A DNA stretch of 62,894 bases, filler included, from Octopus bimaculoides (taxonomy: Eukaryota): the NCBI RefSeq assembly GCF_001194135.2. It is 7 parts of 6 records of this genome, joined end to end, with 100 filler letters (N's around TTAATTAATTAA, not from the genome) between each part and the next. Parts side by side here need not be neighbours in the genome. Positions count along the whole stretch, not along the records: positions 32,665 to 56,491 come from NC_068993.1; 6 more parts are not named here. The stretch is one strand, 5' to 3'. The notes under the pieces are model-generated. The model was not told the DNA's origin and searched no databases. It saw nothing but the letters and a program-made list of their open reading frames with translations. Shown here piece after piece: positions 35,833-54,280 of this stretch. Each line of letters starts with the position of its first letter. The first letter of the stretch is position 1. A program made the position numbers and the translations under genes.

Positions 35833-36990
35833 TTAAATATTCTTTGAATAGCTTTTGTTGTAATTGTCGTTAATATTGAATTCTTTGCCAGTAGAATGAC
35901 GAACGAAATCATTAGAGATAGTTTCCAAATGATTTTCGCATTTCAAATGATTGGTAGCATTAGCAGCACTTGCTAAAACTACATTACATGCATCACATTT
36001 ATGTTGATTTTTTGAAGATATATCTGTTGGAGTGAAAACACCAGAAGTTTCAAGTGTAGCTTTTGAATTGACTGATTCATTTAAAACTTTTTTCTTGTGT
36101 TTCTTACCTTCAAAATGTTGCTTAGCAATAATTCTACTAGTAAACACTACATCACATATCTCGCACTTATCTCCAACTTGGTGATTTTCAGCTGCAACAG
36201 AGGGAAGTTTCTGAGGAGAAGCTAACTCAGCAATTAATCTCGGTAAGATAGTTCTGTTTTCAGTAGCTCTTAGATGTTTCCGACCAGTAAAGTGTGCATC
36301 AGCATCAACTATTCCAGCAAATACAACACCACATATATCACACTCTAATTTAATATTCTTTCTAAGAGCAGACACTGTATTAAAATTTTTCATGTGAATT
36401 TTACCTTTCAAATGATCGGCAGTTTGAGTGGCACTTGTAAATTTGACATCACACAACTCGCATTTGTCTTGATTTATTACAGGCATATTTTCCTGGGTGT
36501 GAAAACCTTGGGAATAATTATCAGGTAGACTGTTTGAAACGACTGCTATAGGTTGGCTTTTAACATTTTTCTGATGTCTCTTACCTTCAAAATGTTGCTT
36601 AGCAATAACATGGCTAGTAAATGCCACGTTACATACATCACATTTATATTCGTTATTTACAGGTAAGTTTACCGGTGTTTGACAGTCAGCGAAAGGATTT
36701 TCAGGTGTCCTGTTTGGAAAGATTGCTTCAGATTGACTTTCAACTTTTTTCTTGTGTTTCTTACCTTCAAAATGTTGCTTAGCATTAACTGGACTCGTAA
36801 ATACCACAACACACACATCACATTTATCTGAGACTGAGACATTTTCATCTTCAGAAGAGGAAATCTTCAAATTGAACATGTCAGAGCAAATACTCAAAAC
36901 ATTTTCTTCATATTTAGTGTTTTCTTGGTGATTATTACCTTCACACAAGGTTTTTAAACATGTAGAATCCGTTTCGAATCTGTTCGGCAT
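35833..36990 (-). CDS. Multi-finger matrin/U1-type (JAZ/ZNF346/ZNF385-like) C2H2 zinc-finger protein, 385 aa, coding region in one exon
   Basis: Uninterrupted ORF. The track start at 37044 is a TTG; the first ATG is at 36990 with A at -3. Six C-X2-C-X12-H-X5-H motifs (e.g. CDVCVVVFTSPVNAKQHFEGKKH, CELCDVKFTSATQTADHLKGKIH) are separated by long linkers. A pyrimidine-rich acceptor (ttttcgtttccAG) lies 6 nt upstream of the ATG. There is an AATAAA on the minus strand at 35220-35225. Orthology cannot be assigned without a search. Confidence 0.88.
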   Translation of the reverse strand: MPNRFETDSTCLKTLCEGNNHQENTKYEENVLSICSDMFNLKISSSEDENVSVSDKCDVCVVVFTSPVNAKQHFEGKKHKKKVESQSEAIFPNRTPENPFADCQTPVNLPVNNEYKCDVCNVAFTSHVIAKQHFEGKRHQKNVKSQPIAVVSNSLPDNYSQGFHTQENMPVINQDKCELCDVKFTSATQTADHLKGKIHMKNFNTVSALRKNIKLECDICGVVFAGIVDADAHFTGRKHLRATENRTILPRLIAELASPQKLPSVAAENHQVGDKCEICDVVFTSRIIAKQHFEGKKHKKKVLNESVNSKATLETSGVFTPTDISSKNQHKCDACNVVLASAANATNHLKCENHLETISNDFVRHSTGKEFNINDNYNKSYSKNI

Positions 36991-37744
36991 TTTCCCCTGG
37001 AAACGAAAATGCGCTGTTTTTATTTCAATCACTTTGAAATACAAGTCGATACTGAGATTAACTCTAATAATGCACTAATTCTTAGATAGAATGACGAATA
37101 GGAAACGAATTTACACTATTTACCTTACAATATAACGTCTGGTCTGTAGAGGTGAGTGGAAAACTTCTTAGTCACCAACAACTGTGCGATCAAACTGAAA
37201 GTAATTTCCGTACGGAAGGAAGTAAAATTTTAAGATCTCGTCCACACCTCTCAACACGTCATTATATACTTCGCATTATATACTTCGCAACTTTTCAACT
37301 TATTTTATTTCCCAAACTTGCAAAAGTTAATTTACTTCAAGTGAAAAAGAAAAAATTAATTTATCGTGTTTTCAGTCCTATCAAAAAAAAAAAAGAAATG
37401 GGGAAGATGGTAATAACATACATACATACATTTTGGGGTCGTGCTGATCTCAATAGTAATTAAATTAAAAAGAAAAGCATTCTCAATACTAGGTGTAGTG
37501 GAATACTATCTTTATATAAAATTTAGTCCGTGCGAGTCGTTAATCAGAAGTTCCCGTTTGTAAAACATTTTTAAAATTTTATTTTTCACTTTGAAATAAT
37601 GTCAAAAAGTTAATTTATGTCTAAGTAATCGCCTCGTTTTGACTACTTCGCTTTGTTCATTTATTCAGTATTGTGTGCTTCTGTTACATGAGACGAATAA
37701 AGATAATTGCCACAGTTAAATGTTCTCTACTACTATTACATATT

Positions 37745-43220: not shown

Positions 43221-44688
43221 GAAAATAAAAATCTTTACTTAAGACAAAGGTCAGCACAAACCAATCAATCTACACAAAGAAATTAAATTTATTTAAATAT
43301 ACACCCTCTGTATAACTGAGGAAACAAGCGTTTGCNNNNNNNNNNNNNNNNNNNNNNNNNNNNNNNNNNNNNNNNNNNNNNNNNNNNNNNNNNNNNNNNN
43401 NNNNNNNNNNNNNNNNNNNNNNNNNNNNNNNNNNNNNNNNNNNNNNNNNNNNNNNNNNNNNNNNNNNNNNNNNNNNNNNNNNNNNNNNNNNNNNNNNNNN
43501 NNNNNNNNNNNNNNNNNNNNNNNNNNNNNNNNNNNNNNNNNNNNNNNNNNNNNNNNNNNNNNNNNNNNNNNNNNNNNNNNNNNNNNNNNNNNNNNNNNNN
43601 NNNNNNNNNNNNNNNNNNNNNNNNNNNNNNNNNNNNNNNNNNNNNNNNNNNNNNNNNNNNNNNNNNNNNNNNNNNNNNNNNNNNNNNNNNNNNNNNNNNN
43701 NNNNNNNNNNNNNNNNNNNNNNNNNNNNNNNNNNNNNNNNNNNNNNNNNNNNNNNNNNNNNNNNNNNNNNNNNNNNNNNNNNNNNNNNNNNNNNNNNNNN
43801 NNNNNNNNNNNNNNNNNNNNNNNNNNNNNNNNNNNNNNNNNNNNNNNNNNNNNNNNNNNNNNNNNNNNNNNNNNNNNNNNNNNNNNNNNNNNNNNNNNNN
43901 NNNNNNNNNNNNNNNNNNNNNNNNNNNNNNNNNNNNNNNNNNNNNNNNNNNNNNNNNNNNNNNNNNNNNNNNNNNNNNNNNNNNNNNNNNNNNNNNNNNN
44001 NNNNNNNNNNNNNNNNNNNNNNNNNNNNNNNNNNNNNNNNNNNNNNNNNNNNNNNNNNNNNNNNNNNNNNNNNNNNNNNNNNNNNNNNNNNNNNNNNNNN
44101 NNNNNNNNNNNNNNNNNAAATCTACATTCTTGTTATTTTTGTTTTCGTTATTGTTTAAATCGAAGCAGGGTTATCATTTTCTGTTTCCAAAATGAAAATT
44201 GCCATTGTTTAACTTTAGTGTTGCAGAATAAAAAAATTAAAATAAAATTTTTTTTTTTTTTTTAATTTCATTTGAAGTAACTTTCTGTCTAAGACACTTG
44301 GCTGTTATAGCACTTTAGCAGTTGCATGCAATAATGCTTTTTTTTTTTTCGAGAGGAATAATTAGCATCCCCTGGTGTGGTGGATAATTAAGGGAACGTG
44401 CATGCATTCCTTTTATATTATTTCATCGATTTCTTAAAACTCATTTTTGTTACTGCCGTCCAACACAAATCTGTTATTGAGGAATCTCAGATGTCCTGTT
44501 TTGTTTCTGCTTTTCAGTTATAAAACAATATATAACTTAGTATAAACAAGAAGTTTATGCGAATATATCTATTTCCTGTTATTTTTAGCCATAAAGACAT
44601 TAATTTATATAAATTCAAATTACGATGAAAGTAAACAAAGTTTGTTTTAGAAGCGTTGAGATGTATTGAAAGTTAAGGAAATGATTTT

Positions 44689-46299: not shown

Positions 46300-47928
46300 G
46301 AGGTAAAGAAACAATGAGATTGATTACGGAAAAAATGGGTAATGGGCATATATGCCATATTTCAGGAGGTTTTGCTCTTCCATCAGCACACATCTTGAGA
46401 TGTGCAACCAATTGAAACACTTGGTGTTGAAGTTGTTGTTCTAAGACACAAATAAAGGCTGCTCTTAGCTCGAGATGCAGTCAGGGACAATTCCTCCAAG
46501 CGTCAGATCACTCCCAGCATATGTCCATTCCTTGCAACTGACTTGTAAGAAAGAGGCTGATTTGAACCCACCACTTCTTGACATGATATCATTTCGTCTT
46601 CCTTCTAGTCACTCATCCTTCCTGTACACACTCGGCTGACCTAAAAATCACTGTTCCCTTTGAAATCTCTCCAGGTTCACAACGAGCTAATCACCCTGTC
46701 CCAAATGTGATGCAGCATTCCATCCACCAATACATTATTTAGAGTAATGATTGAGGTTACCCTTTCTCCCACTGCGTCGTGCAACAAAGCTTTCAGGGGA
46801 TTCAACCACATTTCATCTCTGACCTGCACAGATATGACCCCTTTCACATCTGGCTGCTGCGGCATTACATTTGGGTGTCTCCATTTGTACTGGAATATAA
46901 CTCTTTGTGAGACCAATTCTTTAGTTTGCCTCACTTGGGTGATATGTTGTACCAGAAGGCTGCCTCCAAAGGAGAGAGTTGTCCCCTTTCAGCCATAGTT
47001 TTCATTGTACGATGGTGCCGCTTCACAATCTTGATTCCACTGGGTCTGTATGCAGCCCTGAAGAAGCATCTTATCTCTCACCTTTCAAGCATCTCCTCCA
47101 GCTGCTATGAGTGAAATCTGTACTATTGTCCATCAATAGCTTCTGTATAGCACCCACTTTCCAAGAACACCGTATATTCAGCATTTCTGTGATTTCGGCT
47201 GCAGTCTCTGCCCTGATCTTTTCCCATATAGCCACCCACCCTGGCCCACAGTCGACCATTGAAAAGTATACCTTTCCTCGATAGTGCTTCACATCAGTTG
47301 TTAGCCTCTTTCTAGTCTTCCTCCACCCGAATTTTCCTGTTTTGTGTGCACTTGGTGCAGGGTTGGACTGACACCTGTTGCAGTTCGCTACTACCTTCCA
47401 AACACTCTGTGGTGATATTGGGGTTAACAATCCTGACTAAAAACAACGTCCTGTCACCTCACCCCTATGTGGTGTATGTTGTGCTGCCTCCCCAGTTTTG
47501 GGCTCTCCAGATGACAAGCTACAGCTACTCCACTTGGAACATCCTCTATCGTTTCCAACCAATTTAAATGGCTCTATAGGTAAGTGGTTATACACCATTA
47601 GGTGTATACCTGCTTTCCTATATTAAATTCTGAATAAACGGAACGCAGAACTCCGAACTATCAACACAACAATATTTATTTATGTAGGAAAATAGGCATC
47701 CTTAATCTTGGTTGTTGAGACGCCTTCTGTGAGAGAGCATGGTTGCTGAGATGTTGGAATGTTGATGTGAGCTGTCCCCAGAGTTCGAAAAGATGGAGAG
47801 ACAGCTCGACACGTCCTTGCTCATAGCCAGCCGGCCGAGAAAGAGAATGAAAAAAGCGGGAACGTTTAGATGTCGAACTCCACGCATGCGTGGGACTACG
47901 CATGAGCACGAGACACGGCGTTACTACA
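46300..47928 (-). mobile_element. Deleted Gypsy-like LTR retrotransposon: LTR (~47575-47928) followed almost directly by a decayed integrase
   Basis: HNIHHIGV...VVANCNRCQS (HHCC), RLTTDVKHY...SMVDCGP and LLMDNST (DDE core), VLVDGMLHH. The LTR begins TGTAGTAACGCC and contains AATAAA. Confidence 0.75.
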
Positions 47929-49221: not shown

Positions 49222-50095
49222 AATCATCATCATCGTTTAACGTCCGCTTTCCATGCTAGCATGGGTTGGACGATTTGACTGAGGACTGGTGAAACCGGAT
49301 GGCAACACCAGGCTCCAGTCTGATTTGGCAGAGTTTCTACAGCTGGATGCCCTTCCTAACGCCAACCACTCAGAGAGTGTAGTGGGTGCTTTTACGTGTC
49401 ACCCGCACGAAAACGGCCACGCTCGAAATGGTGTCTTTTATGTGCCACCCGCACAAGCCAGTCCAGGGGCACTGGCAACGATCTCGCTCGAAAATCCTAC
49501 AGGAGCCAGTCAGGCGGTACTGGCAACGGCCACNNNNNNNNNNNNNNNNNNNNNNNNNNNNNNNNNNNNNNNNNNNNNNNNNNNNNNNNNNNNNNNNNNN
49601 NNNNNNNNNNNNNNNNNNNNNNNNNNNNNNNNNNNNNNNNNNNNNNNNNNNNNNNNNNNNNNNNNNNNNNNNNNNNNNNNNNNNNNNNNNNNNNNNNNNN
49701 NNNNNNNNNNNNNNNNNNNNNNNNNNNNNNNNNNNNNNNNNNNNNNNNNNNNNNNNNNNNNNNNNNNNNNNNNNNNNNNNNNNNNNNNNNNNNNNNNNNN
49801 NNNNNNNNNNNNNNNNNNNNNNNNNNNNNNNNNNNNNNNNNNGCCTCACCACCTCAGCCCAGGTCTTCCTGGGCCTACCTCTTCCACGGGTTCCCTCAAC
49901 TGTTAGGGTGTGGCACTTTTTCACGCAGCTATCCTCCTCCATTCTCACCACATGTCCATACCAGCGCAATCGTCTCTCTTGCACGCCACAACTGATGCTT
50001 CTAATGTTCAGCTTTTCTCTCAAGATACTTACACTCTGACGGGTATTCACATTGACATTACACATCCAACGGAGCATACTGGCTTCCAATGTTTT
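49222..50095 (-). mobile_element. 5'-truncated RTE LINE (gap inside)
   Basis: MLRWMCNV...RRLRWYGHVVRMEEDSCVKKC...RGRGRPRKTW, then UTR and (GAT)n tail. Confidence 0.9.
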
Positions 50096-53877: not shown

Positions 53878-54280
53878 ACATGCATATACATACATACAAA
53901 CACATATGTATGTGGATATACAATTACATATATGTAATTGTATATGTAATTGTATATGTAATTGTATATGTAATTGTATGCACCAGTTTCTGGACACAAT
54001 AAAAGATTTATGTGTATGGAGATTAATATGGGTGTAACAATTTCTTTCTTCAGAATTTGTAAAGGTATACTCAATGTGCGACTCATTTTACAGTTTTCTG
54101 CAACCTGGAGAAATTTAATTGAATCAAATGTATCATATTGAAAATCAAACTCCGTCAGATAAATGAATATGAGGACACACNNNNNNNNNNNNNNNNNNNN
54201 NNNNNNNNNNNNNNNNNNNNNNNNNNNNNNNNNNNNNNNNNNNNNNNNNNNNNNNNNNNNNNNNNNNNNNNNNNNNNNNN

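What the first reader, a model, noticed from the sequence alone, without database searches (positions are those of the whole stretch)
35833..36990. Intron-less gene with six JAZ/ZNF385-type zinc fingers: a candidate lineage-specific dsRNA reader
Seen: an intact 385-aa ORF in otherwise decayed DNA, with six C-X2-C-X12-H-X5-H fingers, mostly ending HxxGKxH, separated by long linkers. Established: this spacing defines the matrin/U1-like fingers of ZNF346/JAZ, ZMAT3/Wig-1 and ZNF385, which bind RNA including dsRNA rather than DNA; coleoid cephalopods have very extensive ADAR A-to-I editing of dsRNA. Inference: the single-exon CDS and expanded finger number suggest a retroposed or internally amplified paralogue that could bind dsRNA or editing substrates.
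Basis: partly seen in the sequence, partly recalled or inferred. Interest (0 to 1): 0.75.

Follow-up and report, generated by a model that had tools for sequence, protein, structure and literature searches.

The report
Fast-evolving octopus ZNF346-like zinc-finger gene

Summary
Window 35833-36990 (- strand) is an intact 385-aa ORF with six C-X2-C-X12-H-X5-H fingers (Pfam zf-met E=1e-39). The closest solved relatives are Xenopus dsRBP-ZFa and human ZNF346/JAZ. The piece is Octopus bimaculoides chromosome CM046613.1.

The gene is not intron-less. RNA-seq shows a 127-nt GT..AG intron in the 5'UTR, 6 nt upstream of the ATG. It also shows a 631-nt 3'UTR, an AATAAA signal and a poly(A) tail, giving an mRNA of about 2 kb.

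Syntenic one-to-one orthologues with the same six fingers and linker lengths exist in O. vulgaris (annotated 'finger 346', 74% identity) and in a third octopod (68%). Outside octopods only generic zf-met proteins match.

dN/dS is 0.7-1.0 and the CDS diverges at least as fast as its flanks. Even so there are no stops, only in-frame indels, and all 24 zinc ligands are kept (P about 1e-3 to 1e-5 under neutrality). So it is a functional, rapidly evolving gene, not a pseudogene.

Fingers 1, 2 and 5 are internal duplicates. Retroposition is unsupported, and the ADAR link is untested. The most likely function is sequence-independent binding of dsRNA or structured RNA.

The parts
35833..36990 (-). CDS, 385 aa plus stop codon (35833-35835), contained in one exon
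   Evidence: ORF list. The same protein is called on O. bimaculoides CM046613.1. In-frame upstream stop in the spliced mRNA.
37124..37311 (-). Exon 1, the 5'UTR. The transcription start is approximate, at about 37308-37311. The exon is highly conserved among three octopods.
   Evidence: RNA contigs end at 37308/37311 in X1 and X3. Alignment A2.
36997..37123 (-). 127-nt 5'UTR intron, GT..AG on the - strand, partly retained
   Evidence: Spliced joints in raw RNA-seq reads X20-X22 and in contigs of X1, X2 and X10. Donor and acceptor are conserved in O. vulgaris and the third octopod.
35202..36996 (-). Exon 2: 6 nt of 5'UTR, the CDS and a 631-nt 3'UTR
   Evidence: Continuous RNA coverage. A run of T (on the + strand) is attached at 35202 in X8, which is the poly(A) tail.
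35220..35225 (-). AATAAA polyadenylation signal, starting 24 nt from the end of the 3'UTR at 35202
36754..36822 (-). Finger 1 (aa 57-79), CDVCVVVFTSPVNAKQHFEGKKH
36574..36642 (-). Finger 2 (aa 117-139). It is a tandem 180-nt duplicate of the finger 1 unit.
36394..36462 (-). Finger 3 (aa 177-199)
36274..36342 (-). Finger 4 (aa 217-239), ends HFTGRKH, preceded by the short 17-aa linker
36097..36165 (-). Finger 5 (aa 276-298), a paralogue of fingers 1 and 2 (83% and 75% DNA identity)
35929..35997 (-). Finger 6 (aa 332-354). The zinc ligands are intact, but GK has become CE and 15 nt are deleted just after it in O. bimaculoides only.
37251..37262 (-). Upstream ORF ATG ACG TGT TGA in the 5'UTR, invariant in the three octopods

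Best explanation
This is a single-copy, syntenically conserved, polyadenylated and spliced Octopus gene for a 43-kDa protein. The protein is made of six ZFa/JAZ-type (zf-met) zinc fingers strung on linkers that are conserved in length but free in sequence.

By homology with Xenopus dsRBP-ZFa and vertebrate ZNF346/JAZ, each finger most likely docks on an A-form double helix (dsRNA or structured RNA) without reading the sequence. The array of six would then give avidity for long duplexes. This step is inferred.

The gene evolves at or above the local neutral rate. Selection visibly preserves only the reading frame, the zinc ligands and finger scaffold, the linker lengths and a short N-terminal motif (aa 27-49). 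That pattern fits a protein whose RNA- or partner-facing surfaces are under relaxed or diversifying selection. Such selection could come, for example, from engagement with viral or transposon-derived dsRNA; this last point is speculative.
For: Shown here:
- Finger type: six zf-met fingers.
- Sequence homology: ZFa 1zu1 at E=6e-9 (single sequence) and 3e-11 (profile); ZNF346 2mkd at about 1e-3.
- Collinear four-finger alignment with Polypterus ZNF346, with similar spacing. Other collinear matches are named ZNF346, in spiders.
- Expression: RNA coverage in runs from at least five studies (P1-P5 and P8), a spliced 5'UTR intron and a poly(A) tail.
- Orthologues: found in O. vulgaris in synteny (L001; flanks align at 85-93%) and in a third octopod, with identical finger number and linker lengths.
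- Rate: dN/dS is 0.995, 0.685 and 0.722 for the three species pairs.
- Neutral simulation: P(no stop)=0.008 and 0.003; P(all 24 ligands kept)=4e-4 and 5e-5.
- Indels: only 3- and 15-nt indels in 1158 nt of CDS, against 9 indels in the 435 nt upstream.
- Divergence: CDS 0.124 against flanks 0.085-0.093 (Fisher P=3e-5 and 2e-3).
- Start of the finger helix (positions +10 to +13): dN=0.29-0.48 against 0.09-0.10 for the rest of the finger.
Against: - No binding data exist. zf-met fingers in other proteins (ZNF622, ZMAT2, TUT7, U1C, CIZ1) do other jobs, such as contacting the ribosome, the spliceosome, proteins or DNA (and own knowledge).
- The AlphaFold model was unusable (pLDDT 35), so the fold is not confirmed independently.
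- dN/dS near 1 could mean mostly relaxed constraint rather than an arms race.
- The helix-start signal was picked after seeing the data and rests on 24 codons and three species. It is significant in only two of three pairs (P=0.013, 0.36, 0.031).
- Flank divergence may be underestimated, because local alignment keeps only alignable blocks.
- The tissue of expression is unknown, because run metadata are coded.
Confidence: 0.6

Rival explanations
1. It is a young processed pseudogene or retrocopy that is transcribed but non-functional, and the open frame is chance.
For: The CDS is single-exon. dN/dS is about 1 between O. bimaculoides and O. vulgaris, and substitutions are spread almost evenly over codon positions (63/45/37). 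Finger 6 is eroding in O. bimaculoides.
Against: The frame is open in three species, with P(no stop) of 0.008 and 0.003. All 24 zinc ligands are kept (P<=4e-4). All indels are multiples of 3, whereas the flanks have many indels of all lengths. The promoter, 5'UTR exon and splice sites are conserved. The mRNA is spliced and polyadenylated in many runs. There is no A-tract after the 3' end. The locus is syntenic across species.
Confidence: 0.05
2. It is a functional zf-met protein whose main ligand is not dsRNA. It could be a single-stranded or sequence-specific mRNA binder (like ZMAT3/ZNF385), a ribosome or spliceosome cofactor (like ZNF622/ZMAT2), or a protein or DNA binder. The hypervariable helix-start residues would then set specificity.
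For: The profile also hits ZNF622 (E=1e-3), ZMAT2 (0.03) and TUT7 (0.065). The fastest-changing positions, +10 to +12, lie at the start of the helix; in classical C2H2 fingers that is where base-reading residues sit (plus own knowledge). A conserved N-terminal Ser/acidic motif (aa 27-49) suggests a protein partner.
Against: By a margin of several orders of magnitude in E-value, the best solved match is dsRBP-ZFa. The named collinear matches are ZNF346. Multi-finger arrays with linkers of about 35 aa are the hallmark of the ZFa/JAZ group (own knowledge).
Confidence: 0.25
3. It is a dsRNA reader tied specifically to coleoid A-to-I editing, acting as an ADAR cofactor or competitor.
For: There is only the general fact that coleoids edit heavily and that ZFa/JAZ-type fingers bind dsRNA (own knowledge). 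The protein is detectable only in octopods.
Against: No evidence of any kind was obtainable here. No orthologue is detectable in squid or cuttlefish, which also edit heavily (own knowledge). The fast, near-neutral evolution is unlike a core cofactor of a conserved pathway.
Confidence: 0.07

Closest known systems
Xenopus laevis dsRBP-ZFa (PDB 1zu1)
   Same: Multiple C-X2-C-X12-H-X5-H fingers separated by long linkers. It is the best solved-structure match (E=6e-9 for the single sequence, 3e-11 for the profile), covering two fingers and the linker between them.
   Different: ZFa has seven fingers and about 524 aa (own knowledge). The octopus protein has six fingers plus a possible decayed relic of a seventh at the N-terminus. 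Identity is only about 25-30% and lies in the finger scaffold. Orthology is not shown.
Vertebrate ZNF346 / JAZ (PDB 2mkd, 2mkn)
   Same: Same finger family. Fingers 1-4 align collinearly with Polypterus ZNF346 with similar spacing. O. vulgaris annotators named the orthologue 'finger 346'. JAZ binds dsRNA through its four fingers, shuttles with exportin-5 and is reported to activate PKR (bioRxiv 10.64898/2026.06.03.729416, read).
   Different: JAZ has four fingers rather than six. The vertebrate gene has at least six coding exons spread over about 49 kb (caecilian), against one coding exon here. Vertebrate ZNF346 is conserved, whereas the octopus gene evolves at dN/dS of 0.7-1.0.
ZMAT3 (Wig-1) and ZNF385
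   Same: Same Pfam finger class with wide spacing; they are RNA binders (own knowledge).
   Different: Neither appeared among the named or solved best matches. Only ZMAT2 appeared, at E=0.03. Nothing ties the octopus gene to these rather than to ZFa/ZNF346.
Molluscan zf-met array proteins (Mercenaria 'ZNF346-like'; Haliotis and Mercenaria zf-met + SF2 helicase fusions)
   Same: These are the next-best database relatives, at 103-138 bits. The Mercenaria gene also has its finger array in one large exon.
   Different: They differ in length and finger number. Some carry extra helicase or CARD domains. There is no similarity outside the fingers.

Membership tests
zf-met (matrin/U1-like C2H2) finger, Pfam PF12874 | C-X2-C-X12-H-X5-H ligand spacing | tested here: met
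   Six exact matches, kept in all three octopods.
zf-met (matrin/U1-like C2H2) finger, Pfam PF12874 | Score above the Pfam gathering cut-off | tested here: met
   134.1 bits against a cut-off of 21.2, six stretches. zf-C2H2_jaz scores 73.4 against 22.6.
dsRBP-ZFa / ZNF346 (JAZ) group | Several such fingers separated by long linkers (about 30-45 aa) | tested here: met
   Linkers of 37, 37, 17, 36 and 33 aa. F1-F2-F3 have an exact 60-aa period.
dsRBP-ZFa / ZNF346 (JAZ) group | Significant sequence similarity to ZFa/ZNF346 across fingers and spacing | tested here: met
   1zu1 at E=6e-9 and 3e-11; 2mkd at about 1e-3; collinear BLASTP to Polypterus ZNF346 at E=5e-18 pairwise.
dsRBP-ZFa / ZNF346 (JAZ) group | One-to-one orthology with vertebrate ZNF346 (reciprocal best hit, synteny) | tested here: inconclusive
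   All non-octopod hits score 138 bits or less and are repeat-driven. No other octopus paralogue could be surveyed, because no octopus genome search was available.
dsRBP-ZFa / ZNF346 (JAZ) group | Binds dsRNA / A-form helices independently of sequence | not testable with these tools
   Needs gel shift or CLIP.
dsRBP-ZFa / ZNF346 (JAZ) group | beta-beta-alpha finger followed by a helix-kink-helix | tested here: inconclusive
   The AlphaFold2 model gives strand-strand-helix at each finger, but pLDDT is 35, so it is not trustworthy.
Processed retrogene | No introns at all | tested here: not met
   A 127-nt 5'UTR intron is spliced. The CDS itself is uninterrupted.
Processed retrogene | Genomic poly(A) remnant or target-site duplications at the 3' end | tested here: not met
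   No A-run follows the poly(A) site at 35202. Target-site duplications were not searched for systematically.
Processed retrogene | An intron-bearing parent gene in the same genome | not testable with these tools
   No searchable octopus genome was available. No other octopus protein was returned.
Pseudogene | Stops, frameshifts or loss of essential residues | tested here: not met
   None in three species, which is improbable under neutrality.
ZNF385 / ZMAT3 | Closest named relatives belong to these families | tested here: not met
   The named collinear matches are ZNF346. The PDB profile finds ZMAT2 only at E=0.03.

The most novel reading that the evidence does not exclude
An octopod-restricted array of dsRNA-binding zinc fingers is under diversifying selection at the start of each finger helix. 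Its nonsynonymous rate exceeds that of the flanking non-coding DNA. It would be an arms-race component of nucleic-acid sensing or silencing, aimed at viral or transposon dsRNA. This would parallel the zf-met arrays fused to helicase or CARD domains seen in other molluscs, and it could influence which duplexes are available to ADAR.
Probability: 0.12. Interest if true: 0.6.

Novelty: new member of a known kind. Interest (0 to 1): 0.3.

Why it matters
As a gene type it is ordinary: a ZNF346/ZFa-like zinc-finger protein that automated pipelines already annotate. Its worth lies in two points. First, it is a clean example of a gene with dN/dS near 1 that is nevertheless clearly maintained, which warns against calling pseudogenes from dN/dS alone. 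Second, if the elevated change at the finger helix start is real, it offers a small, tractable candidate for rapidly evolving RNA recognition in cephalopods, an animal group with unusual dsRNA biology and no interferon system (both from own knowledge).

Tried and rejected
- **AlphaFold2 model.** The prediction from the 3-sequence alignment gave pLDDT 35 and pTM 0.17. It is unusable, so no fold search was run.
- **First read-laying run.** Shorter stretches worked.
- **Canonical octopus ZNF346 or parent gene.** A search with the Mercenaria ZNF346-like protein returned only clam paralogues and anonymous contigs.
- **Identity of the third octopod.** The runs are SRR11869390 and SRR11869391.
- **Literature.** A search for 'octopus' plus 'zf-met' found nothing.
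- **Transposon-borne gene.** Considered and rejected, because the locus is single-copy and syntenic between species and RNA reads match at 99% or more.
- **Editing of the mRNA.** Checked and not seen; no T>C on the + strand at 10% or more.
- **Tissue of expression.** Could not be read, because sample names are coded.

Full report
**1. What is there**

The - strand of window 35833-36990 carries an intact ORF of 385 aa from its ATG. A regular-expression scan finds exactly six C-X2-C-X12-H-X5-H units, at aa 57-79, 117-139, 177-199, 217-239, 276-298 and 332-354. They are separated by linkers of 37, 37, 17, 36 and 33 aa. Fingers 1, 2, 3 and 5 end HxxGKxH; finger 4 has GR and finger 6 has CE.

Pfam gives zf-met at E=1.1e-39 (six stretches; 134 bits against a cut-off of 21) and zf-C2H2_jaz at E=1.4e-20.

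The rest of the piece is transposon debris and assembly gaps. There is a reverse-transcriptase fragment at the left edge and a weak integrase fragment at 47071-47430.

**2. Source and gene model**

The identical protein is called on Octopus bimaculoides GCA_001194135.2, chromosome CM046613.1.

Raw RNA-seq reads from three runs, and transcriptome contigs from several independent studies, cover the locus. Reads and contigs join 36996 to 37124 and so skip 127 nt. On the - strand the skipped piece begins GT and ends AG. This intron sits in the 5'UTR, and its acceptor lies 6 nt before the ATG. It is spliced in X1, X2, X10 and X20-X22, and it is partly retained. Contig depths for spliced against unspliced forms are 47 vs 28, 31 vs 48 and 7.5 vs 14.

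Transcript contigs end at about 37308-37311, which is the approximate start. At the other end, AATAAA lies at 35225-35220, and one contig carries a T-run (+ strand) abutting 35202. That run is the poly(A) tail.

The mRNA is thus about 1.98 kb: a 188-nt exon 1 and a 1795-nt exon 2, with a 631-nt 3'UTR. In the spliced mRNA an in-frame stop precedes the ATG, so 385 aa is the product.

The gene is therefore not intron-less; only its CDS is uninterrupted. Read counts are 133-218 reads per roughly 12 million sampled, which indicates expression of a few FPKM in those samples (my estimate).

**3. Relatives**

A word-indexed search of 5.8 billion proteins found two close relatives:
- O. vulgaris 'finger 346' (391 aa, 74% identity).
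- A protein from Logan contigs of SRR11869390/91 (391 aa, 68% identity), from an unidentified third octopod.

Both have the same six fingers in the same order and the same linker lengths (37, 37, 17, 36, 34). The O. vulgaris CDS is also a single exon. Its flanks align with the O. bimaculoides flanks in colinear blocks at 85-93% identity, so this is a syntenic one-to-one orthologue. The donor site, the acceptor site and the 5'UTR exon are conserved in all three species.

An exhaustive HMMER scan of 1.84 billion cluster representatives shows a cliff. The octopus cluster scores 608 bits, and the next hit scores 138 bits. The next hits are generic zf-met array proteins:
- A 1841-aa Haliotis protein and a 1669-aa Mercenaria protein, in which many such fingers precede an SF2 helicase core.
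- A Mercenaria 'ZNF346-like' protein.
- Plant and plankton proteins.
- Further down, bona fide ZNF346 of Polypterus and of spiders.

The alignment to Polypterus ZNF346 is collinear over fingers 1-4 with similar spacing, at 25% identity. Among solved structures the best match is Xenopus dsRBP-ZFa (1zu1; E=6e-9, or 3e-11 with a profile). ZNF346 (2mkd) and ZNF622 follow at about 1e-3, then ZMAT2 at 0.03.

The protein therefore belongs to the ZFa/JAZ kind of multi-finger protein. Strict orthology to vertebrate ZNF346 could not be established.

**4. How it evolves**

Nei-Gojobori dN/dS is 0.995 for O. bimaculoides against O. vulgaris (dS 0.138), and 0.69-0.72 against the third species (dS about 0.25). 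Fingers give 0.49-0.78 and linkers give 0.84-1.21. Substitutions are spread almost evenly over the three codon positions.

Between O. bimaculoides and O. vulgaris the CDS differs at 12.4% of sites. Syntenic non-coding flanks differ at 8.5-9.3% (Fisher P=3e-5, or 2e-3 using distal blocks only). One caveat applies: local alignment may understate flank divergence.

Three features show the gene is nevertheless maintained:
- **No stops.** Random substitution of the observed number of sites leaves the frame open in only 0.8% and 0.3% of trials.
- **Ligands kept.** The same simulation keeps all 24 Cys/His ligands in only 0.04% and 0.005% of trials.
- **In-frame indels only.** The CDS has just two indels, of 3 and 15 nt. 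The 435 nt upstream have nine, of all lengths.

Linker lengths are fixed although linker sequences drift. A short N-terminal stretch (aa 27-49, YEENVLSICSDM.NLKISSSEDE) is almost invariant.

Within the fingers, positions +10 to +13, at the start of the helix, have dN of 0.29-0.48. The rest of the finger has 0.09-0.10. The helix-start value exceeds the gene-wide synonymous rate in two of three pairs (P=0.013 and 0.031). I chose these positions after seeing the variability, so this result is suggestive only.

The conclusion is that this is a functional gene evolving very fast. Selection is visible on the frame, the zinc scaffold and the spacing. Selection on most side chains is relaxed or diversifying.

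**5. Origin**

Fingers 1, 2 and 5 are 75-83% identical to each other in DNA. That is barely below the 83-88% seen between orthologous fingers. Other finger pairs are 41-70% identical.

F1+linker and F2+linker form a 180-nt tandem repeat, and the first Cys residues of F1, F2 and F3 are exactly 60 aa apart. Internal amplification is thus supported, and it predates the three species. A weak fourth copy of the '...EGKKHKKKV' segment lies 174 nt upstream of F1's, inside the N-terminal region (36907-36943). It may be the relic of a seventh finger.

Retroposition is not supported:
- There is a 5'UTR intron.
- There is no A-tract after the 3' end.
- No parent gene was found.
- The clam ZNF346-like gene also has residues 15-456 of 482 in one exon, although the caecilian ZNF346 has at least six coding exons over 49 kb.

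**6. Mechanism**

The following is shown: the gene is expressed, spliced and polyadenylated, and it encodes six intact ZFa/JAZ-type fingers.

The following is inferred from the family. dsRBP-ZFa and JAZ bind dsRNA and A-form helices through these fingers independently of sequence. JAZ needs the fingers for nucleolar localisation, shuttles with exportin-5 and has recently been reported to activate PKR (bioRxiv 10.64898/2026.06.03.729416; the rest is own knowledge). On that basis the octopus protein most likely binds dsRNA or structured RNA multivalently.

The fast evolution and the hypervariable helix starts could reflect conflict with viral or transposon dsRNA. The presence of zf-met arrays fused to helicase or CARD domains in other molluscs would fit that reading. 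This remains speculative. The proposed link to ADAR editing has no evidence either way, and the mRNA itself shows no editing-type changes at 10% or more.

**7. Verdict**

It is partly wrong or unsupported on the gene being intron-less, on retroposition, on the finger number being expanded, and on the editing link.

This is a new, fast-evolving member of a known kind, already auto-annotated in O. vulgaris as 'finger 346'. Interest is modest.

Noticed in passing
window 32665-33010 (- strand), also 33235-33450 and 34840-35053: A LINE-type reverse-transcriptase fragment (Pfam RVT_1, E=3.5e-12) and other repeat copies draw very high RNA depth (up to about 680x). The reads are only 95-99% alike and show many fixed differences. 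They come from expressed copies elsewhere in the genome, not from a unique exon here.
   Followed up: partly
window 37251-37262 and 37124-37270 (- strand): The 5'UTR exon is better conserved among the three octopods than the CDS. It holds an invariant 3-codon upstream ORF (ATG ACG TGT TGA). A second upstream ORF (MRSI*, ATG at 37276) is specific to O. bimaculoides.
   Followed up: partly
window 36841-36900 (codons 31-50): The N-terminal motif VLSICSDM.NLKISSSEDE shows no synonymous change in any species pair (pS=0, pN=0.04), in a gene with dN/dS near 1. It may be a nucleotide-level element or a key protein motif (Ser/acidic, resembling a phospho-SIM or CK2 site). The small sample means this is not significant.
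   Followed up: no
window 36907-36943 (- strand): A weak fourth copy (70%) of the 37-nt segment encoding '...EGKKHKKKV'. It lies 174 nt upstream of the finger 1 copy, inside the N-terminal region (CEGNNHQENTKY). It may be the relic of a seventh finger and is not conserved in the other species.
   Followed up: partly
window 35914-35997 (finger 6 and after): In O. bimaculoides only, finger 6 has changed GK to CE and lost 15 nt (5 codons) just after the last His. Its DNA identity to the orthologous fingers is 71-77%, whereas the other two species share 84%. This finger may be decaying or changing in this lineage.
   Followed up: partly
P0022, P0025, P0028 (Haliotis asinina XP_067654681.1, Mercenaria mercenaria XP_053384999.1 and an unidentified third sequence): Large proteins (about 1700 aa; the two with names are molluscan) combine many zf-met/JAZ-type fingers with a C-terminal ResIII/DEAD + Helicase_C core. 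This fuses dsRNA-type fingers to an SF2 helicase.
   Followed up: no
P0188, P0079 (Mercenaria mercenaria 'ZNF346-like' paralogues): Precomputed Pfam lists a CARD domain (PF00619) together with zf-met fingers. This looks like a possible innate-immune sensor architecture.
   Followed up: no
window 35521: C/T polymorphism in the 3'UTR. T appears in part of the reads of X20 and in all of the X8 contig. On the transcript strand this is G>A, so it is not an editing-type change.
   Followed up: no
window 43332-44100, 49630-49900, 54180-54280 (approximate): Runs of N (assembly gaps) lie inside the piece. The ORFs listed across them are artefacts.
   Followed up: no
window 47071-47430 (- strand): An ORF with a weak integrase-core (rve) match (E=4e-4, below the Pfam cut-off), probably a decayed LTR-element or DNA-transposon fragment.
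   Followed up: no
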